Below are positions 2,520 to 28,949 of a stretch of 64,000 bases of DNA, piece by piece. The translations under genes were made by a program, and so were the position numbers. The stretch is taken from positions 62,001 through 126,000 of IMG/VR virus record IMGVR_UViG_3300044591_002232, one strand, 5' to 3'. The notes below the pieces were generated by a model. It made no database searches, was not told the DNA's origin, and saw only the letters and a list, made by a program, of their open reading frames with translations. Numbering within the stretch: position 1 is the first letter of the stretch; each line of letters opens with the position of its first letter.

Positions 2520-2798
2520 ATGAACCGCGCAGAAACTATCCGTGAATTTCTTAAGGAATCTGGTTCCACTATCATCTCTGTAGAATTTGTAAAAAAGAAC
2601 GGCGAATCCCGCAAGATCCAATTTAACCCGCGTGATCGCCAAGAAATTGTAGGAACCGGCACTAATTCCACCAACCCTGACATTATTCGCGTGAGGGATT
2701 TTAAGATTGCAAAAGATCAAGGTGAAAAAGCCTGGCGGTCTTTTGATGTCAATCGTGTAATTTCTATCACCTCAAACGGAAACACCTTTAACTTCTGA
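2520..2798 (+). CDS. WYL/SH3-like fold phage protein
   Basis: SVEFVKKNGESR...AWRSFDVNRV pattern; follows promoter at 2413. Confidence 0.65.
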   Translation: MNRAETIREFLKESGSTIISVEFVKKNGESRKIQFNPRDRQEIVGTGTNSTNPDIIRVRDFKIAKDQGEKAWRSFDVNRVISITSNGNTFNF

Positions 2799-2816
2799 TC
2801 ATAAATCAACAGATTA

Positions 2817-3053
2817 ATGCTAAAACTCTCTTACAGCAGAAAAAATGACCCATTTAAATATGTGACTGTTCTTGGAGACCCATTAGGTATTTCTGATCTT
2901 TATTGGCAGTTGACTCATAACTATCGGCCACAAGATGGGGCAGAAATAGGAGAAATTAAGATCACAAATCTTGATGGTGTAGAATTGGATATTAAAGAGT
3001 TTTTACGAAATCCATTTGGCCAAATTACACCGCTTTCTTCTTTTTCAGATTAA
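2817..3053 (+). CDS. Hypothetical protein
   Basis: ORF track, operon position. Confidence 0.65.
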   Translation: MLKLSYSRKNDPFKYVTVLGDPLGISDLYWQLTHNYRPQDGAEIGEIKITNLDGVELDIKEFLRNPFGQITPLSSFSD

Positions 3054-3167
3054 TGCTTTACATTAAAATCGCAATCATTGTTTCTCTTGATCTTATTGGA
3101 ATTATGGGTGATTGAGATATTCCTGCCCATGAATGTAAAGGGCCAATTAATTCTTGTTTGAAACTCT

Positions 3168-3192
3168 GAGGCCCCATAAGGCCTCTTTTTTT
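3168..3192 (+). terminator. Intrinsic terminator
   Basis: GAGGCC-CCATAA-GGCCTC followed by a T tract. Confidence 0.8.
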
Positions 3193-3195
3193 GTC

Positions 3196-3201
3196 TAAAT
3201 A
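3196..3201 (+). promoter_or_regulatory. T4-type late promoter TAAATA
   Basis: TAAATA about 20 nt upstream of ATG 3223. Confidence 0.6.
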
Positions 3202-3222
3202 GTAGAAAATACTTACAATCTA

Positions 3223-3552
3223 ATGGAAGAAGTTATTCTATTTTTGATGCAAGAAGGTTTCGCATCTGATGTAAAAAGCGCAATTCATATTTATGAGGCA
3301 ATGAGTGACGAATGGTTAGACACAATCGACGAAAAACTTTCCTATACACAGGGCCAACCATTACCCAAAAAAGATCAAGAAGCACTTAAAACAATTCAAC
3401 AGAGATTATATGGCCCAGGCGGTCCTTATGAAGGTAAACGTGGAATTACTTCCACTGGAAATAGACAATCCACCCCTAGAGTAACTTTAGGTGATAATTC
3501 CAAACCAACCACAAAAAGAAAAGTAACCAGACAGACATTTGAAGTAAAATGA
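3223..3552 (+). CDS. Putative internal head protein family member
   Basis: FLMQEGFASDVKSAIHIYEAMSDEWL domain shared with 30192-30806; late promoter. Confidence 0.65.
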   Translation: MEEVILFLMQEGFASDVKSAIHIYEAMSDEWLDTIDEKLSYTQGQPLPKKDQEALKTIQQRLYGPGGPYEGKRGITSTGNRQSTPRVTLGDNSKPTTKRKVTRQTFEVK

Positions 3553-3917
3553 CCCAAAGATCCCAAGAAATAATTAGAACAATCAAAAAAGCCGGATCCG
3601 AGGCCGGTGACCGCACCCTAGACCTTAACCGCAAGGAAGTTGAGGACCTGAGGCAAAATACAAAGAAGACCTACAAACAATTTCTTGAGGCCGTAAATCC
3701 AAAACTTGGAATGAGCAAGTCTTATGGTGATTCAGACTATCAAGAAAGGTTACAAAAACAAAGAAAGAAAGAACAAGAAAAAAAAGAAGCCGGGAGACAA
3801 AAAACATCAGACGAACTGTATAAAGAAAGAACCAGAGGGAGAGGAATTAGAGCAACCAATAAAGAAGGCCAAAAAGGATGGATTAAAAATGGTAAATTTA
3901 CAGTAGGCGATTGGTAA
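3549..3917 (+). CDS. Basic hypothetical protein, putative internal head protein
   Basis: Internal KTYKQFLEA motif; ATGA-coupled to 3223 gene. Confidence 0.6.
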   Translation: MTQRSQEIIRTIKKAGSEAGDRTLDLNRKEVEDLRQNTKKTYKQFLEAVNPKLGMSKSYGDSDYQERLQKQRKKEQEKKEAGRQKTSDELYKERTRGRGIRATNKEGQKGWIKNGKFTVGDW

Positions 3918-3983
3918 ACTGTCCACTCATGTCCTTCAACGGGGCATTTTTTGTTTATAATCGTTGAAATTCATCACAAAACA

Positions 3984-4166
3984 ATGGATAAAAAAGAAAT
4001 TAAGGCCGCGATTAAGGAAATTGAGCAAGAACAACTCTCTAGAGAATTGAGGCAAAGTTTTATTGAAAAGGGCGTTTATGGATGGTATCGAGATCCTGAA
4101 ACTCCTGATTGTAAAATCACAAAAAAGGGGTGGATGAAAAGGGGAATTATCACCTGGGTCGGTTGA
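3984..4166 (+). CDS. Hypothetical protein
   Basis: ATG 3984 after promoter 3906. Confidence 0.6.
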   Translation: MDKKEIKAAIKEIEQEQLSRELRQSFIEKGVYGWYRDPETPDCKITKKGWMKRGIITWVG

Positions 4167-4237
4167 GGAACTGTCCACCACTAATCACCCAACCCATCAC
4201 TGTCGTTTAAACTGATTCCAGTTAAACAATTTTCGTC

Positions 4238-4546
4238 ATGGCCACTCAGGAACAGAAAACTATTTGGCTCATTGGAGCCGTGGAAAAACTGGGCAATTTG
4301 GGTTTTATGAATAGTCTTTCTCATAGGCTAGATGAGTATGGTATTTCTATATTTTGGGAAGTTGATGAAATCAGGGATATTTTGTTTGAAGATAATAATG
4401 AACTAAAAATGTACATTTATGGGTGGTTTCATGAGGATCTTGATGATGAAGATCTAGATGATCTTTATGATATTGTTTTAACTTTTAAAAATAATAGAAA
4501 TAAAGTATTTACATACGGAATGAATAACTTTCTTCTTGTTAAATAG
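4238..4546 (+). CDS. Hypothetical acidic protein
   Basis: Follows promoter 4158. Confidence 0.7.
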   Translation: MATQEQKTIWLIGAVEKLGNLGFMNSLSHRLDEYGISIFWEVDEIRDILFEDNNELKMYIYGWFHEDLDDEDLDDLYDIVLTFKNNRNKVFTYGMNNFLLVK

Positions 4547-7327: not shown

Positions 7328-7909
7328 ATGTTGACTCCAATTGATTTCAAAAACAACTATTTTTCTCTGCTTACTGAAAGTCAGTCTATTACTGGAGTGA
7401 CTCCAGGAGTGACTCCAAAGTATGATGAATATAAGGATGTAACCGAAGATGATAAGTTTACTGTAGAGCAATGGAGTAATCTTGTAAAGGTTGCATCAAT
7501 CATCAAGGCAAATGAAAACCGGTTTGAGATGCAAACCTGGCACAAAAAATCAGAATGTGGTACAATTCATTGTATCGCAGGCTGGGCAGAATCTCTTGTA
7601 AAAAAGGATACAAACTATTTGGATACAAAAGATACTTGGATTACGGCCACAGATGTTCTATCTGAATATGCCGAACCATTCTTTTTTATTGAAATAAATG
7701 CTATCATTCCTGGGTTGGGCTTTCCTGGGGTGGGAGATTATGATTCTATCGTGGATAAGAGGAACGAGCACAAAGGACTTCCAGAACAACTGGTAATGAA
7801 GTGGTTCATTGACCCAATTCTTGAGGAAGCACGTAAAGAATCTCATGAACTTTCTAGTGAAATCAGCCAGTTTATTCAAAAAGCCCAGGGAGAATTTGCT
7901 CTGGCCTGA
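7328..7909 (+). CDS. Hypothetical protein with CGTIHCIAGW motif
   Basis: ORF track; follows promoter 7240. Confidence 0.75.
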   Translation: MLTPIDFKNNYFSLLTESQSITGVTPGVTPKYDEYKDVTEDDKFTVEQWSNLVKVASIIKANENRFEMQTWHKKSECGTIHCIAGWAESLVKKDTNYLDTKDTWITATDVLSEYAEPFFFIEINAIIPGLGFPGVGDYDSIVDKRNEHKGLPEQLVMKWFIDPILEEARKESHELSSEISQFIQKAQGEFALA

Positions 7910-10855: not shown

Positions 10856-12064
10856 ATGTTGGTCCAAAAATCGGTTAAACTTAGAATCTATCCAAATAAC
10901 AAACAAGATGTTATTCTTCTTGAAAAGCATTTTGGTTGCAGGAGATTCGTGTATAATCATTTTCTAGAAATATTTAATGAAAATTACCACCAGGGTAAAA
11001 AGAAGTTGTCCTATGTTGATGCCGCCAAGATTCTTGTTGACCTTAAAAAGTCAGAAGAAGCTCAATGGTTGAAAGAAGTTAATTCGCAATCTCTTCAGGC
11101 AACGCTTAAGGACTTAGATGGGGCTTTTGATAGGTTTGATAGGAAAATAACCGAGTTTCCTAATTATAAGACTAAAAGAAAATCCAGAGCATCATTTAAG
11201 GTCCCTCAGCATTTTGATATTGATTGGGAAAACAATCTTATTACTATCCCTAAATTTAAGACTCCATTTAAGTTTAGTGGAAAGTACAAGGGTGACCTGG
11301 TTAAAATTAATTCTGTTACTATTTCAAAAACTCCTTCTGGAAAGTATTATGCTTCCGTTCAAGGAGAATTTGATATTCAACCAAAACCACAAGTTGAAAA
11401 CTGTATCGGGATTGATTTGGGAATTAAGGATTTGGTCATTACTTCTAATGGCGAAGTTTTTCCAAACAAAAGATTCCTTAAGAGAAAATTAAAAACTCTT
11501 AAGTATATCCAGAGACAACATTCTAAAAAGAAAAGAAATTCAACAACAAGAGAACGATGGAGAAAAAAGTTAGCAATTCATTATGAAAAAGTAACTAATC
11601 AAAGATTAGATTATCTTCACCAAATTACTTCTCAACTCATTAACGAAAACCAAGTTATTTGTATTGAGAATTTGAACGTGAAAGGAATGGTCAAGAACCA
11701 TAAATTAGCCCAGGCCATTAGTGATGTTGCCTGGGGCACACTAGTTAGACTGTTAGAGTATAAATGTCAATGGAACTCAAGAGAACTTGTTGTTATCGAT
11801 AGATTCTATCCTTCAAGTAAAACTTGTAGTTCTTGCAGTCATTTGATGGCGGAAATGCCTCTAAATGTAAGAGAATGGACTTGTCCTTCTTGTGGAACGG
11901 TTCACGATAGAGACATCAATGCTGCCAAAAACATTCTAATTCAAGGATTAAATATTCTGTCTGGTTCAGGAACTGAGTCGGACATTAAACAAAAACAGCA
12001 GGAGGCGTCTTCAATAGAAGAGTCTGTGAATGCTGAAACCGCGATGTCTTCAGCTTCGCGGTAG
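10856..12064 (+). CDS. tnpB: RNA-guided endonuclease TnpB
   Basis: N-terminal HTH (LRIYPN...FGCRRFVYN), RuvC-I GIDLG, RuvC-II IENL, Zn finger CSSC/CPSC, RuvC-III DRDINAA. Confidence 0.95.
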   Translation: MLVQKSVKLRIYPNNKQDVILLEKHFGCRRFVYNHFLEIFNENYHQGKKKLSYVDAAKILVDLKKSEEAQWLKEVNSQSLQATLKDLDGAFDRFDRKITEFPNYKTKRKSRASFKVPQHFDIDWENNLITIPKFKTPFKFSGKYKGDLVKINSVTISKTPSGKYYASVQGEFDIQPKPQVENCIGIDLGIKDLVITSNGEVFPNKRFLKRKLKTLKYIQRQHSKKKRNSTTRERWRKKLAIHYEKVTNQRLDYLHQITSQLINENQVICIENLNVKGMVKNHKLAQAISDVAWGTLVRLLEYKCQWNSRELVVIDRFYPSSKTCSSCSHLMAEMPLNVREWTCPSCGTVHDRDINAAKNILIQGLNILSGSGTESDIKQKQQEASSIEESVNAETAMSSASR

Positions 12065-18439: not shown

Positions 18440-18660
18440 TATAATATATTTGTACTATTTGTATTATTTCGTAGTATATCTGTATTATTTTGTTTTTATG
18501 TAGTAGTATATCTGTATTATTTTGTTTTTATGTCTATATTATTTTATATTTTATAATTTAGTCTTTTTTATGTAGTAGTATATCTGTATTATTTTATATT
18601 TTATATTTTATATTTTATAATTTATAATTTAGTCTTTTTTATGTAGTAGTATTGGCCTGC
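18440..18660. repeat. AT-rich tandem repeat tract
   Basis: Three copies of TAGTATATCTGTATTATTTT and two of TATAATTTAGTCTTTTTTATGTAGTAGTA. Confidence 0.8.
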
Positions 18661-19353: not shown

Positions 19354-19386
19354 AATCCAGGGTGTTTATACTCTGGATTTTTTTCT
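19354..19386 (+). terminator. Intrinsic terminator
   Basis: AATCCAG...CTGGATT plus T tract. Confidence 0.7.
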
Positions 19387-19409
19387 ATTCTTTATAAAAA
19401 TATAATATG

Positions 19410-19451
19410 GCAGGATAAGTGTCCAGTTTTATATCATTGCGACCCTTCGCT
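19410..19451 (-). repeat. Element B copy 1 (candidate sRNA core)
   Basis: GCAGGATAAGTGTCCAGTTTTATATCATTGCGACCCTTCGC; minus-strand promoter not evident. Confidence 0.7.
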
Positions 19452-19616
19452 GATTTAATTTTGAGCGGGTGGGTGTCTCCTATCGACTGAGTTTATTCTA
19501 GTTGCTAGTAACGCGGAGAAGGGCATAAGTGTGCCAGTTGTTTAAGTGTCACAAGGCCCTGACCAGTCACGCATTATCTCCCTTATAATAAGCTAGTCAT
19601 TACACCATTATCGTCA

Positions 19617-19826
19617 ATGGAATTTCTTAAATTAACCGATTGGCAAACTCGTGAGCCAGTTTACCTAGATCCAAATAAAATACTCTTTATTCAGCAAATA
19701 GCCGAACATGATGATTATCCTCGACGCACTCGTATAGACATTATTGGCAGTTCCCAGATTTTTCTTGTTTCGGAAGATGCTGACCAGATAGCTCTTGTTA
19801 GTGGTAGGGGGTTTCAGGATATTTAA
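19617..19826 (+). CDS. Hypothetical protein
   Basis: Follows promoter 19533. Confidence 0.7.
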   Translation: MEFLKLTDWQTREPVYLDPNKILFIQQIAEHDDYPRRTRIDIIGSSQIFLVSEDADQIALVSGRGFQDI

Positions 19827-19878
19827 TAAAAACCAATTTCACCACATCTTATAATAAACCAGTCAACACAAAAACACC

Positions 19879-20040
19879 ATGGGACCAATTACTTTTAAGG
19901 ACTTTTGTGTTATTTTTGTTTTTTCGGTTATTTTCGTTTTAATTACATCTGCATTTGATGCGGCTCTTATTAAAATGAATCTATTGCAATCAAATCAAGT
20001 TACGGAGTGTGCCAGTTGTTTAAGTGGCACAAGGTCCTGA
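19879..20040 (+). CDS. Small membrane protein
   Basis: Read manually; runs through the promoter repeat. Confidence 0.45.
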   Translation: MGPITFKDFCVIFVFSVIFVLITSAFDAALIKMNLLQSNQVTECASCLSGTRS

Positions 20041-20091
20041 CCAATCATCCATTCTCTCCCTTTACAATAAAAGGGTCAACACAAAAACACC

Positions 20092-20244
20092 ATGGGACAA
20101 ATTAATTTTTCAACCATTCGTACCATTTTTGTTTGTTTAGTCATGGGAGCTTTTCTGTTTGTTTGTATGTCAACGACGATGTATAGATTTATTCTTATGC
20201 TCGATCTAAACTCACAAAATCCAGTTTGTGTAGGGAGGATCTGA
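20092..20244 (+). CDS. Small membrane protein
   Basis: Read manually, 50 aa; follows promoter 20011. Confidence 0.55.
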   Translation: MGQINFSTIRTIFVCLVMGAFLFVCMSTTMYRFILMLDLNSQNPVCVGRI

Positions 20245-20250
20245 AGTATA

Positions 20251-20280
20251 AAGGAGAGAATAAATCTCTCCCGTTTTTTA
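20251..20280 (+). terminator. Intrinsic terminator
   Basis: GGAGAGA-ATAAA-TCTCTCC plus T tract. Confidence 0.7.
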
Positions 20281-20295
20281 TAATAATATAAAAGT

Positions 20296-20349
20296 GCAGG
20301 AGTAGTTTCTCGTTTTATGTAATCACGCCCCTGCGTTGTTTATAGTATA
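20296..20349 (-). ncRNA. Element B copy 2 (candidate sRNA)
   Basis: Conserved core, hairpin ACGC-AGGG-GCGT, minus-strand TATACT at 20349-20344. Confidence 0.55.
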
Positions 20350-20509
20350 AACTATAAAAACCTGGACCGTGGTTGATGGTGTGCCAGTTGTTTAAGTGGC
20401 ACAAGGTCCTGACCAATCATCCATTCTCTCCCTTTACAATAAAAGGGTCATCACCAACGTAACGTGTGATGAAAACCCACCACTAAAATCTCTACAACTC
20501 CTGTTTCCC

Positions 20510-20710
20510 ATGACTCAAATCACTCTAACCTCTGGTGAAATCCTGGACATTATTTCAGTCTTGTGTGATGAAGAGCAGGCAGTTTATGATAATAGCCCAC
20601 ATCTGTCGGCTTATTATCTGAACATGGTTCAACAATTCGAGGCTGTTTATAATAAACTCCAAGAATTGCCTGGTGAAAAAATAGTTGCAAACCTTATTCT
20701 GGCTGCCTGA
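20510..20710 (+). CDS. Hypothetical protein
   Basis: ATG 20510 after promoter 20383. Confidence 0.65.
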   Translation: MTQITLTSGEILDIISVLCDEEQAVYDNSPHLSAYYLNMVQQFEAVYNKLQELPGEKIVANLILAA

Positions 20711-20713
20711 ATT

Positions 20714-20842
20714 ATGATTATCATTTACCGTGCTAATCAGTGGGAGTTGTTTCGTGCTCCCCAGGATATAAACGAGGCCTGGGAGCTGGCGGTTAAATTA
20801 ACTTTGGAATCTGGCGTTCAGCATTACGTTGGGCGCGTCTAA
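20714..20842 (+). CDS. Small hypothetical protein
   Basis: Read manually, 42 aa, followed by a terminator. Confidence 0.55.
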   Translation: MIIIYRANQWELFRAPQDINEAWELAVKLTLESGVQHYVGRV

Positions 20843-20895
20843 AAATATAAAGGAGAGATTTATTCTCTCTTTTCTTTTTATAATAATAAAAAATT

Positions 20896-20937
20896 GCAGG
20901 AGTAGTTTCTAGTTTTATGTAATAACGCCCTTGCGCT
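20896..20937 (-). repeat. Element B copy 3 (candidate sRNA core)
   Basis: GCAGGAGTAGTTTCTAGTTTTATGTAATAACGCCCTTGCGC; possible minus-strand TATAAT at 20964-20959. Confidence 0.7.
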
Positions 20938-21097
20938 TGTGTGGTTGTCTTAAGACCATTATAACGCCTCTGGCGGGCTCCTGGGGGCCTCTGGTGATCA
21001 TTCCTGCTTATGGGTCCAATCAGATAATCTTATCAGTAAAGGTCTTGACTTATCGGTGGTGGTGGTTTATTCTTTAGAAGTCGCTGGGATTCCTCCC

Positions 21098-21766
21098 ATG
21101 AAAAAGTATTCTCTGGTTATTAAAGAGCATGAAGAATACGGTGGACTAGGTATAGTTGTAGATACTGGTCGTAATTATTTTGAGCCAGGATTGGATGGGC
21201 TAGTTGTTGCCCATGACATTCTAGAACATACTGTAAAGCCACACTCTTGTGGTTATACTGATGAGCTTATGGCGATTGGCGGTTATATTGCCGGGAGAGT
21301 TGCGTGTGGATATAATTCTAGAGGTTATAGATCAGCCTCGATTGATGATGTAAGTAGTGATATTCAGTCTCTACTCACTGCCTCATTAAATGGTGATGAT
21401 TATGATTTTACAAAAATTGATAAGTGTAATTCGTATCTGCAGGATCAGTGGATTATGGATAAACTCAGGAAAAACGTAAGAGAAGGTATAATTGAGGCCC
21501 TGGATGAATGGTCTGATGGTGAATATGGTGAAGAAGAATTGGCCGATTATGATATTGATTCCATCGTTGGATGGATCTGTAAGGGTTATCAGATGTTTAA
21601 GAAAAGATTTTCTAATATGTATTCTTATGATCATTTGTTTACATCTATTCGTAAGGCAGCGGATAATTTCCTTAGTGATGCAATTGAGGGACAAACTGCT
21701 ACTTTATGTGTCGATTTTTCGTCATGTAATGTATACATAAAAGACGAAAACGGCTGGGATTATTAA
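21098..21766 (+). CDS. Hypothetical protein with VAHDILEH motif
   Basis: ATG 21098 after TTGACT(21045)-17-TATTCT(21068). Confidence 0.75.
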   Translation: MKKYSLVIKEHEEYGGLGIVVDTGRNYFEPGLDGLVVAHDILEHTVKPHSCGYTDELMAIGGYIAGRVACGYNSRGYRSASIDDVSSDIQSLLTASLNGDDYDFTKIDKCNSYLQDQWIMDKLRKNVREGIIEALDEWSDGEYGEEELADYDIDSIVGWICKGYQMFKKRFSNMYSYDHLFTSIRKAADNFLSDAIEGQTATLCVDFSSCNVYIKDENGWDY

Positions 21767-21852
21767 ACAATAGACAGTTCAACAACTGGCACAAGGGGAC
21801 TGTTTATGGTCCCCATCTCACCCTATATTAAGCAAGTCAACCGGACACGATC

Positions 21853-22104
21853 ATGCAAACCACCATCCACCACACTGATAACGAAGGGTCCACCCCGGTT
21901 TGGATCACTTGGTTTTCACAATCCGATTGTGATCAACATAATGAAGCCGAAGGATTGCGTGAAACTTCTGGTGATAATTTGTATGAACCAGGTTACTATT
22001 GGGCAGTTTGTTCTCCTGGTTGTATTCCTAATTCTGAGTTTTTTGGCCCATTTGTTACAACTGAAGAGGCCGAAGATAATGCTAATGAGGTATTGAATTA
22101 TTGA
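21853..22104 (+). CDS. Hypothetical acidic protein
   Basis: Follows promoter 21773; PGYYWAVCSPGCIP...GPF motif. Confidence 0.7.
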   Translation: MQTTIHHTDNEGSTPVWITWFSQSDCDQHNEAEGLRETSGDNLYEPGYYWAVCSPGCIPNSEFFGPFVTTEEAEDNANEVLNY

Positions 22105-22114
22105 TAATTCGTAT

Positions 22115-22146
22115 AAAAGAGTTAGTTAATTCTGACTCTTTTTTGT
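22115..22146. terminator. Bidirectional terminator
   Basis: AAAAGAGTTAG-TTAATT-CTGACTCTTTT. Confidence 0.7.
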
Positions 22147-22170
22147 TGTTTTTTATAATAATAAAAAAGT

Positions 22171-22238
22171 GCAGGATAAGTGTCTCGTTTTATGTTATTG
22201 CGGTCCTCCGCTTGTTTTCTTTTGTTGTTTATAGTATA
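22171..22238 (-). ncRNA. Element B copy 4 (candidate sRNA)
   Basis: Identical to copy 5 over 68 nt; minus-strand TATACT at 22238-22233. Confidence 0.6.
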
Positions 22239-22354
22239 ATCCATAAAAACCTTAATCGTGACTGATGGTGTGCCAGTTCCATAAGTGTCACAAGGCCCTG
22301 ACCACCAACCCATTATCTCCCTTATACTAATCCAGTCAACCAGACAATTCTCCA

Positions 22355-22738
22355 ATGGCCACTATCTCTGACAAAATAGCCAAACAACTTGAGGAGATTG
22401 AAAATAGGGCTTATAAGGAAATTGATGCAATTGCAGAACAATACTTTGAATCAACTGTTGTTCCATTCTGTAAAGAGAATGATCTAACTTTTGTGGTAGG
22501 TATGGGTAAGATATTCTTTTGTAATGAGAAATATGATCTGAGTTTCCATGAGTCTGACGAGATTCCAGATGTTAATGAGGATCTTTTAGAGCTAGACGAA
22601 GATGATCTTTATCCTTGTGAAAAATATGCTTTAGAGCACCCATTGGCCAAGGAAAAACTAAGAGAGATTTTCGATGTTCTTAACATTATAGTTTTCAAGT
22701 TTGAGTTTGGTTTTAGTGTTCCTAACTTCCAAGGATAA
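22355..22738 (+). CDS. Hypothetical acidic protein
   Basis: Follows promoter 22272. Confidence 0.75.
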   Translation: MATISDKIAKQLEEIENRAYKEIDAIAEQYFESTVVPFCKENDLTFVVGMGKIFFCNEKYDLSFHESDEIPDVNEDLLELDEDDLYPCEKYALEHPLAKEKLREIFDVLNIIVFKFEFGFSVPNFQG

Positions 22739-22836
22739 TTATTTTAATTGTGCCAGTTGTTTAAGTGGCACAAGGTACGGTGATCGTCTGGTTTTTATGG
22801 GTTACAGTTGACTAGTCAACCAAGGGAACGCCTCTC

Positions 22837-23036
22837 ATGTCTTGCCCCTATCAGAACAACGGTTTTGCTAATCGTGGGGAGTATCTTGATAATTTGCGCG
22901 AAGAATATGGTAGCCTAGTTGATGTTCTGACCAACATCTTGCCCCTAGTGAAGATTTTGACGGGCTAGTTACAGAACTGGAAGACGCTATGGATTCTGGG
23001 GAATATGACGAAAAAGAATTTCTCACCTTGATCTAG
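22837..23036 (+). pseudogene. Frameshifted conserved phage gene
   Basis: MSCPYQNNGFANRGEYLDNLREEY...LP continues as SEDFDGLVTELEDA if one C is added at the C-run 22942-22945. Confidence 0.6.
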
Positions 23037-23070
23037 TTAATTTACCAACTTTCCTTCATTCTTTATAGTT

Positions 23071-23250
23071 ATGTCTGTCACACTTAGCGGTTATTGTATT
23101 CGCATGGCTTTACTTGATCGCCGTAGAGAATTGATCCGGTGCGCGTCTATCACTAAAGATGCTACTTTTGATTCTAAGATTAAAGAATTGGATGACGCAT
23201 TGGTTCAACTTTGGTACGCAAAGGAAATTATACTAACTGAAGTAGTATAA
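23071..23250 (+). CDS. Hypothetical protein
   Basis: Read manually, 59 aa, followed by a terminator. Confidence 0.6.
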   Translation: MSVTLSGYCIRMALLDRRRELIRCASITKDATFDSKIKELDDALVQLWYAKEIILTEVV

Positions 23251-23254
23251 AAAA

Positions 23255-23297
23255 CAGTGACCCGCGAGTTCTTTATACTTACGGGTCACTTTTGTTT
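23255..23297. terminator. Bidirectional terminator
   Basis: GTGACCCG...CGGGTCAC flanked by A and T tracts. Confidence 0.75.
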
Positions 23298-23320
23298 AGT
23301 ATAAAAAATAGTATAAAAAA

Positions 23321-23411
23321 GCAGGATAAGTGTCTCGTTTTATGTTATTGCGGTCCTCCGCTTGTTTTCTTTTGTTGTTTATAGTATAAAACACTTTTCC
23401 AGTATTGTCAA
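23321..23411 (-). ncRNA. Element B copy 5 with consensus minus-strand sigma70 promoter
   Basis: TTGACA(23411-23406)-17-TATACT(23388-23383) firing into the conserved core. Confidence 0.7.
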
Positions 23412-23521
23412 GCATTTTATGATTAGTGTTGCTTATCAATCCCATAAGCACCGCTGATCGTTAAAGGCTTGACCTAGTGGGGCTGATCTGGTATTCTTTA
23501 AAGGTAATCGGGTTTCACCCC

Positions 23522-23965
23522 ATGACTGTTTCATTCGTTGATTTTGCAGCTTTCCAGGATGCTCAGAATAAAATTCAATTGAATGTCAGGAAGTATTGTC
23601 TCCAGTTGATTGATGCCCTGAAGGATAATTATCGGAATTATGCTATTCGCGGACATCAAATTTTCATCGATAGGGAAGAATCAGTTGAGTATCATCAATC
23701 TTGTATTGATAAACTGAAAGAGGGACATTCCGACATTGATTATGAAATTGAGTCGGGTAGTAAGTATCACAAAATCATTATGATTTCTTATGGTGGATCA
23801 CGTTCGGTTCATTGTTTTGTTGATAAAAAGACCGGGGAAGTTTATAAATCAGCAAGCTGGAAATCCCCTGCTAAAGGTATTCGATTTGATCTGCGATTGA
23901 TCAAAGATCGTGAATGGTTGTTTGAAAATGCCGATTGGAGTGGTGGTTATCTTTACAAGAGATGA
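23522..23965 (+). CDS. Conserved cyanophage-type hypothetical protein
   Basis: KYHKII...RSVHCFVDKKTGEVYKSASWKSPAKG; promoter TTGACC(23469)-17-TATTCT(23492). Confidence 0.8.
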   Translation: MTVSFVDFAAFQDAQNKIQLNVRKYCLQLIDALKDNYRNYAIRGHQIFIDREESVEYHQSCIDKLKEGHSDIDYEIESGSKYHKIIMISYGGSRSVHCFVDKKTGEVYKSASWKSPAKGIRFDLRLIKDREWLFENADWSGGYLYKR

Positions 23966-23978
23966 ATCGAATAATTAT

Positions 23979-24003
23979 AAGAATCCTTCGGGATTCTTTT
24001 TTA
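23979..24003. terminator. Intrinsic terminator with UUCG tetraloop
   Basis: AAGAATCC-TTCG-GGATTCTT plus T tract. Confidence 0.85.
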
Positions 24004-24027
24004 TTGTTTATAGTGTATTATTATAGT

Positions 24028-24118
24028 GCAGGATAAGTGTCTCGTTTTATGTTATTGCGGCCTTCCGCTTGTTTTCTTTTGTTGTTTATAGTATAACACC
24101 GATCCATAATACTGTCAA
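24028..24118 (-). ncRNA. Element B copy 6 with consensus minus-strand sigma70 promoter
   Basis: TTGACA(24118-24113)-17-TATACT(24095-24090). Confidence 0.7.
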
Positions 24119-24208
24119 GGTTTTATTGATAAGTGTTCCTGATCGGTCCAGGGCTTGACGGATCGGCCCTGATCTGCAATACTTAAAGGGTCAAAGGCAA
24201 TTCAAGCC

Positions 24209-24499
24209 ATGAACATGACAAAAAAGGGCTACATTTTCACTTCTGAAACTGAAGTCGAAAGGGGAATTAAAGCCTCTTCTCTAGCAGAGGCTACCGGAAA
24301 ACTTCCCGATAGTTTTAAGTGGGATGATTATTATGTCGAAGAACTTTATCACATTGCCAAACTGGGTGATAATGGTAAGTGGGAAATCATCGAATCCTTC
24401 TGGGATTATGATAATGCCGATGCAAAACTTGATTCAGTTTGTGATAAGTATCCGAGTGCTTATGTGGAGATTACCTATAATGGAGTTCCTGTAGGTTAA
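24209..24499 (+). CDS. Hypothetical protein
   Basis: Promoter TTGACG(24155)-17-AATACT(24178). Confidence 0.75.
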   Translation: MNMTKKGYIFTSETEVERGIKASSLAEATGKLPDSFKWDDYYVEELYHIAKLGDNGKWEIIESFWDYDNADAKLDSVCDKYPSAYVEITYNGVPVG

Positions 24500-24512
24500 T
24501 TTACAGTAACTC

Positions 24513-24545
24513 GTGGCCTGGAGTTTCTTATACTCTGGGCCACAA
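24513..24545 (+). terminator. Terminator hairpin
   Basis: GTGGCCTGGAG...CTCTGGGCCAC. Confidence 0.65.
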
Positions 24546-24577
24546 CTTTATTTTGTTTTTTATAATAATAAAAAAGT

Positions 24578-24668
24578 GCAGGAGTAGTTTCCCGTTTTAT
24601 GTTATCACGCTTTTGCGCTCTTTTTATTTTGTTGTTTATAGTATAGCAGCAGTGACCCATAAAGTCAA
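24578..24668 (-). ncRNA. Element B copy 7 with minus-strand sigma70 promoter
   Basis: TTGACT(24668-24663)-17-TATACT(24645-24640). Confidence 0.7.
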
Positions 24669-24778
24669 GGTTTTATTCATAAACATATTTTATCAGCCCC
24701 ATAAGCACGGCTGATCGTTAAAACCCACCACTAGCCTCTAGAGCTGCTACACTATGGGAGCAGTCAAGGGAACAACCC

Positions 24779-25180
24779 ATGATCAAACTCACCGGAACCG
24801 CTCTCCTGGCCCACCGTGAGGCCTGCCGTGCTGCTGGTGTCAGCAATGCTATTATTGTTCGCTCTGCCGGTTATATTGGAACCCGCAAGGATGGCAGCGA
24901 GCGGCTACAATTTACCGAGTATTATGAGAATGTTCTCATTGCCAAAGGTGAAATGTTCCGCATTAAAATAGACGTGGCCGAGATTACCCCAGCCGGACTA
25001 CAGCCCGTGTGGGGATATTCGTTCACTACGACTACTAAAAACCACCAGAGTATTGCCCGTAAAGTGCGGGAACTGACTCAACTTACCAATGTTAAATGCA
25101 ATCGAACTGTCAAAGATGGGGTGATTCGTTTACAGCCCAAGGGAACGAATGAAATGATTGCTTATAGTTTGCCCGCATGA
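24779..25180 (+). CDS. Hypothetical protein
   Basis: ORF track, cassette position. Confidence 0.75.
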   Translation: MIKLTGTALLAHREACRAAGVSNAIIVRSAGYIGTRKDGSERLQFTEYYENVLIAKGEMFRIKIDVAEITPAGLQPVWGYSFTTTTKNHQSIARKVRELTQLTNVKCNRTVKDGVIRLQPKGTNEMIAYSLPA

Positions 25181-25257
25181 GTTAGTAACAATCAGTGGCC
25201 CTGGAGTTCTTTATACTCTAGGGCCTTTATTTGTTCTTTATACTTTATTATTTTATG

Positions 25258-25300
25258 GCAGATTAAGTGTCTTGTTTTATATCATTGCGGCGCCCCCGCT
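25258..25300 (-). repeat. Element B copy 8 (candidate sRNA core)
   Basis: GCAGATTAAGTGTCTTGTTTTATATCATTGCGGCGCCCCCGC. Confidence 0.7.
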
Positions 25301-25476
25301 CTTTTTATTTTGTTGAAATAATACTAGGAAAGATCAGGCCAGGCCGTTGTATCGGCTGATACCAAACGGCCATCAGCGGATCTTATCAGTCGAATCCTGG
25401 AAACGGTAGCGGTTGATACAGAACGGCGAGCCGAAACGTGGGATTATTAAAGGGTCAAACAACCGGAGCCGATCCG

Positions 25477-27755: not shown

Positions 27756-28949
27756 GTGTTACAATTCATGGGTCCTTCACACGACATAAAAATGCAAAAA
27801 ATAAAAATTAAAGAGCACGCTGGTTACTATTTCTCCTATGATCCAGAAGATCCTACGGTTCCAGTAACCATCAATAGTAACTGGAGAAAAACGGGTAAAA
27901 CACCAGCCGTTATTAACGAAACCTATAGCCGTCCTCTAAAGTCCGCCGATGATAGGGACCGGCTATACGTAACCATCGCAACCATGGGTAAAAAAGAAAG
28001 ACTTTATCTTGATACCCTGGTTGCATCCTACCTTGTCCCCAACCCTAATAATCACAAAAGAGTAATCCATAAAGACGGGAGCATCTACAATTGCCACCCA
28101 TCCAATCTAAAATGGGCAACCGAAAGTGAATTTAGAGAATTTGCTGTTTCAATAAATCGGGCAAAGGGTCGTACCAAACAATTTCTTGCCACCTATAAAG
28201 ATGGAACCACAGAAGTTGTAACGGGATTTTTAAACTTCCTCGACAAAAAAGGAATAACCGAACACACTCTCTATCGTCTTCGTAAAGGAGAAATTAGTGA
28301 ATATAATGGTCTGGTTTCTTTTGAAGAGATTAAGCGAACAATAAAAGGTAGATCACCTAAAAAAGAACCCCTCCAAATTGATCTAACTGGTTTCGATATT
28401 GTAGAACTAGACGATTGGCCCGGTTATTATGTTGTCTATAAAAAAGACGATGTTAATACTCCTGTAAGAATCTTCAGTAAATGGAAAAAGGAAAAAGAGG
28501 GAATGGTTTTGTGCGAGAATTTTGTAAGAGAAACTACCCAACACATTCATAAGACGGGATATCCCGAAGTTAACATGAAACTTCCCGGTGAAAAGAAGAT
28601 CGTCAAGAAATTACATCGTCTAGTCGCAAAACAATTGGTCGAAAATCCTGATCCAGAAAATTTTGTTACTGTTGATCATATTGACTGGAATAAATTAAAT
28701 AGCCACCCATCTAATCTTCAGTGGATGACATCTGCCCAGAATTCGGCCAAAGGAGGCCCCACAGAAGATGGAGTTTATGTTCCGAAAAAATATGAAATTA
28801 CATATGCAGATGGTCGAAAAGACGTTGTTGACAATTTAAACAAATTCTGTAAGGATAATAATTATTCTCATGGTTGTGCATATGCAATGGCCAATGGTAG
28901 AAATTCTATTCATAAGGACATCATAAAAATCCAAAAAATCGAAACATGA
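27756..28949 (+). CDS. Homing endonuclease with two tandem HNH modules
   Basis: VIHKDGSIYNCHPSNLKW and VDHIDWNKLNSHPSNLQW, each followed by a NUMOD1-like domain; start may be 27756, 27768 or 27792. Confidence 0.8.
   Translation: MLQFMGPSHDIKMQKIKIKEHAGYYFSYDPEDPTVPVTINSNWRKTGKTPAVINETYSRPLKSADDRDRLYVTIATMGKKERLYLDTLVASYLVPNPNNHKRVIHKDGSIYNCHPSNLKWATESEFREFAVSINRAKGRTKQFLATYKDGTTEVVTGFLNFLDKKGITEHTLYRLRKGEISEYNGLVSFEEIKRTIKGRSPKKEPLQIDLTGFDIVELDDWPGYYVVYKKDDVNTPVRIFSKWKKEKEGMVLCENFVRETTQHIHKTGYPEVNMKLPGEKKIVKKLHRLVAKQLVENPDPENFVTVDHIDWNKLNSHPSNLQWMTSAQNSAKGGPTEDGVYVPKKYEITYADGRKDVVDNLNKFCKDNNYSHGCAYAMANGRNSIHKDIIKIQKIET

What the first reader, a model, noticed from the sequence alone, without database searches (positions are those of the whole stretch)
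19410..25320. Array of 8 conserved, structured intergenic elements transcribed antisense from their own promoters (candidate phage sRNA family)
Seen: eight copies of one element (19410, 20296, 20896, 22171, 23321, 24028, 24578, 25258), spaced 550-1275 bp apart. Each sits between the terminator of one small-gene cassette and the promoter of the next. On the minus strand it reads TATACT, an A-rich leader, a short hairpin, then A(A/T)(C/T)ATAAAAC-N-R-G-A-M-ACTW(A/C)TC(C/T)GC, an AT tract and the terminator. The hairpin stem covaries (GCGG/CCGC, GCGA/TCGC, ACGC/GCGT, GCGC/GCGT) around purine-rich loops (AGGA, AAGG, AGGG, AAAA, GGGCG). The G.U pairs form only on the minus strand. Copies 5-7 have consensus sigma70 promoters (TTGACA or TTGACT-17-TATACT) pointing into the element; copies 2 and 4 have the same -10 box. 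Copies 4 and 5 are identical over 68 nt. No ORF is present. Inference: about 90-130 nt early non-coding RNAs kept in many copies, acting for example as a protein decoy or anti-defence RNA. Alternatives are iterated R-loop replication primers or single-strand recombination sites for cassette exchange. I do not recognise this element.
Basis: partly seen in the sequence, partly recalled or inferred. Interest (0 to 1): 0.88.

Follow-up and report, generated by a model that had tools for sequence, protein, structure and literature searches.

The report
Repeated promoter-plus-RNA module in cyanophage
Eight copies of a strongly conserved non-coding module, each with its own backward-pointing bacterial-type promoter and a small covarying hairpin, separate the small early genes of a freshwater T4-like cyanophage; the module is undescribed, probably makes a short RNA, and also marks where gene cassettes get swapped.

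Summary
There are eight same-orientation copies at the stated coordinates (8 matches, 0 expected by chance) and none elsewhere in the window. The window is a T4-type cyanomyovirus related to Synechococcus phages B3/B23.

The element is confined to this clade: about 12 IMG/VR contigs, 2 metagenome contigs and B3/B23. B3 has exactly 7 copies in one 6.6-kb stretch of its 245-kb genome. No Rfam family matches, and neither the B3 genome paper nor its annotation mentions it.

The 4-6 bp hairpin covaries (91% paired against 75% in shuffles; 27 stem variants). Nine G.U pairs form only on the minus strand, against two doubtful plus-strand cases. The minus strand has a -10 box at a fixed distance, often with a TG extension or a TTGACA at 17 nt. 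The plus-strand TATAAT-like box never has a -35.

The core is 100% identical between relatives whose flanking genes are 30-75% identical. One inverted copy in a relative keeps its promoter, hairpin and core, so the unit is autonomous.

Most likely it is a short minus-strand early transcription unit whose RNA exposes a conserved 25-30 nt segment. It also serves as a PeSL-like crossover point. Expression, 3' end, target and function remain unshown.

The parts
19387..19500 (-). Copy 1: upstream AT box (19387-19403), core 19410-19437, hairpin 19439-19450 (GCGA/TCGC), distant minus-strand -10 candidate TAGAAT 19495-19500
   Evidence: (64.3 bits)
20277..20349 (-). Copy 2: upstream box TTTATAAT 20277-20284, core 20296-20323, hairpin 20325-20336 (ACGC/GCGT), minus-strand -10 TATACT 20344-20349 (short leader)
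   Evidence: (61.8 bits)
20877..20963 (-). Copy 3: upstream box 20877-20884, core 20896-20923, hairpin 20925-20936 (minus strand GCGC/GCGU with G.U), minus-strand -10 TATAAT 20958-20963
   Evidence: (62.3 bits)
22152..22238 (-). Copy 4: upstream box 22152-22159, core 22171-22198, hairpin 22200-22211 (GCGG/CCGC, loop AGGA on minus), A-rich leader, minus-strand -10 TATACT 22233-22238
   Evidence: (84.7 bits)
23296..23411 (-). Copy 5: AT box region 23296-23320, core 23321-23348, hairpin 23350-23361, minus-strand -10 TATACT 23383-23388 and -35 TTGACA 23406-23411 (17-nt spacer)
   Evidence: 11/12; 79 bits
24007..24118 (-). Copy 6: upstream box 24007-24014, core 24028-24055, hairpin 24057-24068, minus-strand TG-extended -10 TATACT 24090-24095 and -35 TTGACA 24113-24118
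   Evidence: 11/12, TG; 84.6 bits
24559..24668 (-). Copy 7: upstream box 24559-24566, core 24578-24605, hairpin 24607-24618 (minus strand GCGC/GCGU with G.U), minus-strand TG-extended -10 TATACT 24640-24645 and -35 TTGACT 24663-24668
   Evidence: 10/12, TG; 79 bits
25237..25326 (-). Copy 8: upstream box TTTATACT 25237-25244, variant core 25258-25285 (GCAGATTAAG...), hairpin 25287-25299 (GCGG-CGCCC-CCGC), minus-strand -10 TAGTAT 25321-25326. The orthologous copy keeps this variant in at least five related contigs
   Evidence: (70.7 bits)

Best explanation
Each copy is a self-contained, selected, non-coding module at a cassette boundary in the early hyperplastic region of B3-like freshwater cyanomyoviruses. 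Read on the minus strand, against the genes, it runs: a host sigma70-type promoter (TAnnnT -10, often TG-extended or with TTGACA at 17 nt), an unpaired A-rich leader of about 14 nt, a 4-6 bp GC hairpin with a purine loop, 25-30 nt of conserved sequence predicted to stay single-stranded (AAUAACAUAAAACGAGACACUUAUCCUGC), a U/A-rich stretch with a conserved UAUAAA box, and then the preceding gene's terminator hairpin read backwards. I infer that host RNA polymerase fires these promoters early in infection and makes many copies of a short RNA. Its exposed conserved segment would act in trans, either by base-pairing with a host RNA or by titrating an RNA-binding protein. As a by-product, the repeated modules are homologous crossover points at which early ORFan cassettes are exchanged, as with PeSLs in other T4-type phages. 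Shown here: the repeats, selection on the core, hairpin covariation, strand asymmetry, promoter conservation, autonomy of the unit, and recombination at the module. Inferred only: transcription, RNA length, trans action and target.
For: Repeat and specificity. Hairpin covariation: 91% of cells paired against 74.7% in shuffles (0/500) and 17-50% when partners are slid; one pair is 11 C-G, 10 G-C and 1 A-U; 27 distinct stems, including unrelated ones such as AGAGG/CCUCU and GAGGC/GCCUC. Strand: 9 G.U pairs on the minus strand against 2 doubtful plus-strand ones; loops are 88% purine on the minus strand. Promoter: a minus-strand -10 at a fixed 20-23 nt in 38 of 42 copies, TG extension in 17 of 42, -35 of at least 5/6 at exactly 17 nt in 12 of 42 with unrelated spacer sequences; the plus-strand box has 0 of 42 with a -35. 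B3 copies carry TGCTAGACT. Selection: the core is 100% identical to L001 and L002 while flanks are 30-75% identical, and the copy-8 variant is kept in orthologues. Folding: leader and core are unpaired in the minus-strand folds of copies 4, 6 and 8. Autonomy: the inverted L012 copy keeps promoter, hairpin, core and UAUAAA box with no adjacent gene end. Not coding: 2 of the 8 window copies and about a quarter of all distinct copies lack the ATG, and loop length varies from 4 to 6 nt. Recombination.
Against: There is no expression data of any kind. Only 22 of 62 copies have a clean hairpin plus U-run on the minus strand after the core, so a discrete short RNA is not assured. About half the copies have only a bare -10 box, which is common by chance in AT-rich DNA. 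No complementary partner site is enriched in the 64-kb window, and host genomes could not be searched. The G.U asymmetry rests on perhaps 2-4 independent events. The conserved plus-strand TTTATAnT box upstream of the core remains unexplained. The hairpin is tiny, and the rest of the RNA shows no testable structure.
Confidence: 0.45

Rival explanations
1. DNA-level boundary element. The conserved core is the binding site of a phage or host DNA-binding protein acting as regulator, roadblock or insulator at each cassette border. The minus-strand promoter is an accessory (for example divergent-promoter supercoiling coupling), and the RNA itself has no function.
For: The core is conserved as sequence, not structure. 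It shares AAGTGTC with the half-site of the palindromic motif in the neighbouring gene promoters, and B3's core and B3's motif share AAsTGTCC. The module always sits between a terminator and the next promoter. There is no consistent minus-strand terminator.
Against: A duplex DNA site does not explain compensatory changes in the hairpin or the one-sided G.U pattern. The core has no dyad or direct-repeat symmetry. The 7-mer shared with the promoter motif is only marginally above chance by my estimate (about 0.05).
Confidence: 0.2
2. Promoter plus conserved leader of long antisense transcripts. The minus-strand promoter reads through the reversed terminator and covers the upstream early gene with antisense RNA, to silence it or protect it from RNase E. 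The conserved segment is the leader that controls the stability or extension of that transcript.
For: About 65% of copies lack a U-run after the reversed hairpin. The inverted L012 copy reads, with no terminator in between, towards a gene. That long antisense RNAs protect cyanophage mRNAs from host RNase E is recalled from the literature and was not checked here.
Against: In the window 3 of 8 reversed terminators pass the strict scan and about 2 more look functional by eye. The strong GC hairpins remain obstacles either way. This does not explain why the leader sequence is so strongly conserved.
Confidence: 0.15
3. Plus-strand reading. The TATAAT-like box upstream of the core starts a plus-strand RNA that is either a 55-60 nt RNA ending at the hairpin plus T-tract, or a leader/attenuator for the downstream cassette. 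It may be bound through UUUUAUGUWAU by the phage RegA-type repressor.
For: A TTsTTTATAnT box is conserved 6-21 nt upstream of GCAGG in nearly all copies, including B3 and the inverted copy. It resembles the -10 context of this phage's own gene promoters. A T-rich tract follows the hairpin on the plus strand. B3 encodes a RegA homologue. The resemblance to RegA operators is from memory only.
Against: No -35 in any copy and TG in only 2 of 42. On the plus strand about a quarter of stems are reduced to 3 bp by A.C mismatches, too weak for termination. The T-tract is interrupted in B3 and absent in two B3 copies. About a quarter of copies lack the AUG.
Confidence: 0.08
4. Passive PeSL-type repeat. 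The similarity is kept only by gene conversion and recombination between regulatory junctions, and the core has no function of its own.
For: Cassettes differ between relatives at these modules. All four combinations of two flanks and two spacers occur around cttgacaatac. L005 copy 4341 has the flanks of window copy 4 but another copy's hairpin. Copies 4 and 5 are identical over 69 nt.
Against: Copy-specific variants (the copy-8 core, the copy-1 and copy-3 types) are kept in orthologous positions across phages whose flanks have diverged to 30-75% identity. B3 retains the architecture at much lower sequence identity, with compensated stems. The element is absent from B3's other large block of small genes.
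Confidence: 0.08
5. R-loop replication primers or origins: the purine-rich minus-strand RNA stays hybridised to its pyrimidine-rich template and primes DNA synthesis, as at T4 oriF/oriG.
For: The first ~50 nt of the predicted RNA are strongly purine/A-rich, and a promoter is attached. T4 origin biology is recalled from established knowledge.
Against: Seven or eight origins within 6 kb is hard to justify. R-loop origins need no conserved 25-nt sequence or covarying hairpin. An AT-rich repeat block just upstream (18449-18652) is a likelier origin candidate.
Confidence: 0.04

Closest known systems
PeSLs (promoter-early stem-loops) of T4-type phages (Arbiol et al. 2010, PMC2839356; Comeau et al. 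2014, PMC4122927)
   Same: Both are repeated intergenic composite motifs in the hyperplastic regions of T4-type genomes. Both sit next to terminator stem-loops and sigma70-like early promoters, flank ORFans, and lie where closely related phages differ by cassette insertion, deletion or replacement.
   Different: A PeSL is stem-loop, AT-rich tract, -35/-10, then SD and the start codon of the next gene, all in gene direction; its conserved parts are the promoter and the stem. Here the conserved promoter points the other way and has no ORF. The best-conserved part is a 25-30 nt non-promoter core plus a covarying mini-hairpin. The gene terminators themselves are not conserved. The element occupies only one 6-7 kb region of the genome.
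Phage- and prophage-encoded trans-acting sRNAs (e.g. DicF, IpeX, anti-sRNAs of EHEC prophages, sRNAs reported for some lytic phages); recalled from the literature, not checked here
   Same: Own promoter, about 100 nt, an unstructured conserved segment flanked by hairpins, and an AU-rich stretch before a terminal hairpin.
   Different: Those are single-copy genes with known or predicted targets. Here there are 7-10 differentiated copies per genome tied to cassette borders, no target is known, the terminator is inconsistent, and expression is unproven.
Antisense RNAs of cyanophages (CfrI of S-PM2; long asRNAs of P-SSP7); recalled from the literature, not checked here
   Same: Cyanophage transcription against the direction of the genes.
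   Different: Those overlap coding genes and are not repeated sequence families. This element is intergenic, repeated and sequence-conserved.
Lambda nut sites / HK022 put (conserved linear box plus small hairpin acting on RNA polymerase)
   Same: A conserved linear sequence next to a small stem-loop with a purine-rich loop, repeated at transcription-unit borders of a phage early region.
   Different: No boxA-like sequence. The element lies downstream of terminators relative to the genes. No N-like factor is known. This resemblance was not tested.

Membership tests
PeSL (promoter-early stem-loop) | Repeated intergenic motif concentrated in a hyperplastic region of a T4-type phage, flanking ORFans | tested here: met
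   T4-type structural genes. The 8 copies lie between small genes with no family hit except one DUF. B3 has the same arrangement.
PeSL (promoter-early stem-loop) | Order: stem-loop, AT-rich tract, sigma70-like -35/-10, SD, start codon of the downstream gene, with the promoter pointing at that gene | tested here: not met
   The conserved sigma70-type promoter points away from the downstream gene and towards the preceding terminator, and no ORF follows it. The downstream genes use separate promoters.
PeSL (promoter-early stem-loop) | Associated with indels and replacements between closely related phages; recombination within the motif | tested here: met
   Cassette replacement and loss between the window and L004, L010, L001 and L002. 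All four flank/spacer combinations occur around the -35 box. A hairpin swap occurs within otherwise identical flanks.
PeSL (promoter-early stem-loop) | Formation of excised mini-circles between neighbouring motifs | not testable with these tools
   Needs inverse PCR on phage DNA.
Trans-acting bacterial/phage sRNA | Own promoter | tested here: met
   By sequence only: a fixed-distance -10 in 38 of 42 copies, TG in 17 of 42, a near-consensus -35 at 17 nt in 12 of 42, retained in the inverted copy.
Trans-acting bacterial/phage sRNA | Defined 3' end (intrinsic terminator) | tested here: inconclusive
   22 of 62 copies pass a strict hairpin plus U-run test on the minus strand; 3 of 8 in the window pass.
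Trans-acting bacterial/phage sRNA | Accessible conserved seed with complementary target(s) | tested here: inconclusive
   The core is predicted unpaired, but no excess of partner sites occurs in the window. Host genomes could not be searched.
Trans-acting bacterial/phage sRNA | Detected transcript | not testable with these tools
   No transcriptome is available here.
Any Rfam family | Score at or above the family's gathering threshold | tested here: not met
   0 hits in the whole window at gathering thresholds. In E-value mode only weak hits appear, far below their gathering scores, and none centres on the core; the one that overlaps an element (rli40, 20.4 bits against a gathering score of 100) spans mostly the upstream terminator.
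Intrinsic (rho-independent) terminator, plus strand | GC-rich stem of at least 5 bp followed directly by a U-tract | tested here: not met
   The stem is 4 bp, or 3 bp on the plus strand in about a quarter of copies. It is not reported by the terminator scan. A terminator would not explain the conserved 25-nt core.

The most novel reading that the evidence does not exclude
A lytic cyanophage carries an array of 7-10 differentiated, individually conserved early small RNAs, each fired from a consensus host promoter at a cassette border. Their shared exposed segment sequesters a host RNA-binding factor or defence component (an RNA decoy or anti-defence function), and the sequence variants between copies broaden what they can act on.
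Probability: 0.15. Interest if true: 0.85.

Novelty: new variant of a known kind. Interest (0 to 1): 0.62.

Why it matters
How T4-like cyanophages, which lack MotA and AsiA, organise early transcription and take over the host is poorly understood, and very few non-coding RNAs are known from lytic phages of environmental hosts. This module is the most conserved sequence in a fast-evolving early region, more conserved than the genes it separates. A cultured phage (B3/B23) with a culturable host carries it, so the question can be tested at the bench. If the RNA is real, it is a multi-copy early sRNA family of a kind not described before. If it is a DNA element, it extends the PeSL idea of regulatory cassettes driving modular gene shuffling to cyanomyoviruses, where a previous search in S-PM2 found no dense PeSLs, and adds a component that PeSLs do not have.

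Tried and rejected
- **N4-type hairpin promoters.** I considered these because of the two giant ORFs. Rejected: the ORFs are baseplate and structural proteins of a T4-type phage, gp6/gp7/gp8-like.
- **T4-type late promoters.** This phage's late boxes look like (C/A)TAAATA upstream of the structural genes. There is no TATAAATA on the plus strand, and the element's boxes read TATAAAnAA.
- **Micro-ORF.** A 15-codon ORF exists in copies 4-6 (copy 7's runs longer), but copies 2-3 read ATG-TAA, and copies 1 and 8 and many relatives have no ATG. Stem swaps and loop-length changes alter or shift the frame.
- **Second stem inside the core (CAGGA-N6-UCCUG).** It is perfect in B3/L009 types but mismatched in most copies. 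Its partner columns are invariant, so it cannot be tested, and one pair favours each strand.
- **Pseudoknot between CCUGC and the hairpin loop.** It works only for ACGC-AGGG types.
- **CsrA-type GGA loops, IHF site, integron attC R-boxes, sigma54.** By eye the motifs are not conserved or do not fit; no tool test was run.
- **Targets inside the phage.** None is enriched.
- **Host or bacterial origin.** The genome contigs and metagenome-contig scans used a skeleton of only 16 fixed bases and were swamped by chance hits. After filtering, only L207 and L209 were real and no bacterial genome had the element.
- **Megablast against deposited phages.** It found nothing; sensitive blastn was needed to find B3/B23.

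Full report
**1. The observation**

The repeat is real. The repeat finder returns one family of eight 100-nt copies starting at 19379-25227, spaced 886/600/1275/1150/707/550/680 bp. The 25-nt core pattern GCAGGAKWAGTKTCNNGTTTTATRT, allowing up to 3 mismatches, hits exactly the eight stated positions, all on one strand. Shuffles give 0.00 expected matches. A covariance model built later finds the same eight (61.8-84.7 bits) and nothing else in the 64 kb below E=0.1.

Each copy follows a terminator-like hairpin plus T-run and precedes the promoter of the next small gene. The minus-strand TTGACA/TTGACT-17-TATACT sites at copies 5-7 are among the best sigma70 matches in the 9-kb region, at 11, 11 and 10 of 12. 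Copies 4 and 5 are identical over 69 nt.

**2. What genome this is**

The window encodes T4-type baseplate proteins (gp6 domains, a gp8-like wedge), head-completion proteins, a tail-sheath stabiliser, large terminase and sheath. The two giant ORFs are structural proteins, not an N4-type polymerase.

The terminase is 67% identical to that of Synechococcus phages B3/B23. These are 244-kb freshwater Kyanoviridae from a subarctic lake whose host belongs to the Synechococcus-Cyanobium complex. No deposited phage is close at the DNA level. The window matches the copy spacing of IMG/VR contig 3300044591_002232, which is 249.8 kb.

**3. Distribution**

- The element occurs in about 12 IMG/VR contigs, in two metagenome contigs (L207, L209), and in B3/B23.
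- No bacterial genome carries it. The Thioploca/Marithrix hits are an unrelated repeat.
- In the complete B3 genome the model finds exactly 7 copies, all within record positions 114.1-120.8 kb. They share one orientation, lie in unannotated intergenic gaps between small hypothetical genes just upstream of gp25/gp6/gp7, and are absent from the other 238 kb. This is the same genomic position as in the window.
- Relatives hold up to about 10 copies, giving 62 distinct copies in all.
- Rfam has no match at gathering thresholds. In E-value mode only weak hits far below their gathering scores appear, and none centres on the core.
- The B3/B23 announcement does not mention the element.

**4. Anatomy**

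On the gene (plus) strand the order is:

1. the upstream gene's terminator;
2. a box TTsTTTATAnT;
3. 6-21 nt of AT-rich sequence;
4. the core, GCAGG-NNN-AGTGTC-NN-GTTTTATRTNAT;
5. a 4-6 bp hairpin;
6. a pyrimidine tract, TYGTTTTCTTTTGTTG;
7. a box that reads TAnnnT on the minus strand;
8. in many copies, GTCAA 17 nt further on.

The cassette genes between copies are ORFans, with one DUF7717 as the only family hit.

**5. The hairpin is a selected structure**

On a 25-sequence alignment, 91% of cells pair. Column shuffles give 74.7% (0 of 500 reach the observed value) and slid partners give 17-50%. The covariation score is 0.463 against 0.188. One pair is split 11 C-G, 10 G-C and 1 A-U.

Across the 62 distinct copies there are 27 different hairpins at the same position. 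They include unrelated stems such as GCGG/CCGC, ACGC/GCGU, GCGA/UCGC, AGAGC/GCUCU, AGAGG/CCUCU, GAGGC/GCCUC, AGAGGU/ACCUUU and AGAGCC/GGCUUU.

**6. Which strand**

Three lines of evidence favour the minus strand.

- *Wobble pairs.* Among the distinct hairpins there are 108 Watson-Crick pairs and 9 pairs that work only as G.U on the minus strand. Two would favour the plus strand, and both are doubtful: one is an optional outer pair and the other sits in a degenerate copy. The nine fall in at least two different stem families, so they reflect perhaps 2-4 independent events.
- *Promoter signals.* The minus strand has a -10 hexamer 20-23 nt from the hairpin in 38 of 42 copies, a TG extension in 17 of 42, and a -35 of at least 5/6 at exactly 17 nt in 12 of 42. 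The spacer sequences are unrelated to each other, which is the usual mark of a selected promoter. The plus-strand box never has a -35 (0 of 42) and carries TG in only 2 of 42. B3-type copies carry TGCTAGACT or TGCTAGAAT.
- *Stem strength.* On the plus strand about a quarter of stems fall to 3 bp, and the following T-tract is interrupted or missing in B3. A plus-strand terminator is therefore not conserved.

Folding the predicted minus-strand transcripts gives a consistent, simple picture for copies 4, 6 and 8: an unpaired A-rich leader, the small hairpin, an unpaired core, an AU stretch, and the reversed gene terminator. Copies 2, 5 and 7 show some extra pairing within the core.

**7. Selection rather than recent copying**

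Around copy 8 the core window is 100% identical to two distant relatives (L001, L002). The windows on either side are 70-90% identical and the flanking genes 30-75%. Copy 8 keeps its own core variant (GCAGATTAAG...TATATCAT) in at least five contigs. B3 keeps the architecture with much lower sequence identity and compensated stems.

**8. The unit is autonomous**

In L012 one copy (4317-4384) is inverted and sits back-to-back with a normal copy. It keeps a TTGACT-18-TATGCT promoter with a TG extension, the leader, a GCGC-GGGCG-GCGC hairpin, the core and the UAUAAA box. No gene end or terminator is adjacent, and it points in the sense direction towards a 494-aa gene that has its own promoter. The module therefore does not depend on its usual neighbours.

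**9. Recombination**

Cassettes between modules differ among close relatives.

- Window cassettes 5 and 6 (1257 nt) are replaced by about 570 nt in L004.
- L010 lacks the copy-1/copy-2 region and carries a different first gene after copy 3.
- Cassette 6 is essentially unique to the window, with only a 72% partial match in L012.
- Upstream of the minus-strand -35, two different flanks combine with two different -35/-10 spacers in all four ways around the shared cttgacaatac. This is a direct sign of crossovers inside the module.
- One L005 copy has the flanks of window copy 4 but another copy's hairpin.

This is what PeSLs do in RB49/phi1, T4/PST and KVP40/nt-1. In the cyanophage S-PM2, by contrast, dense PeSLs were looked for and not found.

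**10. Weak points**

- There is no expression evidence.
- Only 22 of 62 copies have a strict hairpin plus U-run on the minus strand after the core. The RNA could be about 70 nt, about 110-130 nt, or the leader of a longer antisense transcript.
- Half the copies have only a bare -10 box.
- No partner site is enriched in the window.
- The conserved plus-strand TTTATAnT box is retained even in the inverted copy and remains unexplained. It may mark a facing promoter.
- The core shares AAGTGTC with the palindromic motif of the neighbouring gene promoters. This leaves room for a DNA-binding reading.
- B3 encodes a RegA-type repressor, and the plus-strand core contains UUUUAUGUWAU. That resemblance to RegA operators is from memory and was not tested.

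**11. Verdict**

This is a genuine, selected, undescribed non-coding module specific to B3-like freshwater cyanomyoviruses. The best reading, at about 0.45, is a short minus-strand early transcription unit whose RNA exposes a conserved segment, with PeSL-like cassette shuffling as a demonstrated by-product.

It works like a PeSL for recombination but fails the PeSL definition on promoter orientation and on coupling to a downstream gene. It looks like an sRNA gene, but transcription, 3' end and target are untested. I rate the novelty as a new variant of a known kind and the interest as 0.62.

Noticed in passing
window 19530-19600, 20008-20080, 20380-20450, 21775-21840, 22269-22340, 22749-22825; also upstream of the genes at 7328, 9805 and 12978: A second repeated promoter-type motif: an imperfect palindrome (GTGCCAGTT..AAGTGGCAC, or GTGACACCTGA..AACTGGCAC), then (C/T)GACC, about 19 nt, TAYAMT and AGTCAAC, directly upstream of many plus-strand genes. 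The 19-nt spacing is not sigma70-like, so it may be a factor-dependent (middle?) promoter. B3 has its own version. It is also a recombination junction: L010 joins window 19881 to 20508.
   Followed up: partly
window 18449-18652; B3 locus L255 7400-7947: An AT-rich block of degenerate direct repeats just upstream of the array, next to a minus-strand gene. B3 has a comparable block of roughly 40-nt repeats beside tRNA-Leu. It is a candidate replication origin, or the 'short repeat regions' mentioned in the B3/B23 paper.
   Followed up: no
window 19360-19372, 23262-23279, 24517-24539, 25200-25222: The loops of the gene terminators upstream of copies 1, 5, 7 and 8 carry (G)TTCTTTATACT, the same box that lies upstream of the element core. 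Copy 8 has it twice within 30 nt.
   Followed up: no
window 25341-25372: A long imperfect hairpin (GGCCGTTGTATCGGCTGATACCAAACGGCC) downstream of copy 8. It lies in a stretch that stays 73-90% identical in relatives even where the following gene is not conserved.
   Followed up: partly
L012 4317-4384 (opposite strand to the other copies): A single inverted copy of the module, back-to-back with a normal copy at 4463-4530. It is complete with promoter and boxes and points towards a GC-rich 494-aa gene (2711-4195).
   Followed up: yes
window 10856-12064 and 27756-28949: A 402-aa transposase matching phrog_506 (E=7e-129), which looks like an IS605/TnpB-type protein, and a 397-aa HNH endonuclease. 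Both are mobile-element genes flanking the early region.
   Followed up: no
window 19879-20040 and 20092-20244: Two tandem paralogous small ORFs (53 and 50 aa) with duplicated upstream regions (repeat D7, 76% identity). This pair, together with copy 2, is missing in L010.
   Followed up: no
window upstream of 10856, 26673, 45019, 54565, 58316 and 61738: (C/A)TAAATA boxes 15-60 nt upstream of structural and other genes, probably this phage's late promoters.
   Followed up: partly
window 22837-23026: A 43-aa ORF is followed by sequence that looks as if the reading frame continues in another frame, which could mean a frameshifted small gene in cassette 4.
   Followed up: no
loci L026, L059, L062, L070, L085, L112, L133 and others (Thioploca/Marithrix MAGs): An unrelated, highly repeated roughly 60-nt element (..AAACCTGCCAGGTTTTTAAAACCTGGCAGGTTTAGTTTCGGGTTTTATTAAATCC..) in large sulfur bacteria, picked up by chance with the loose search pattern.
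   Followed up: no
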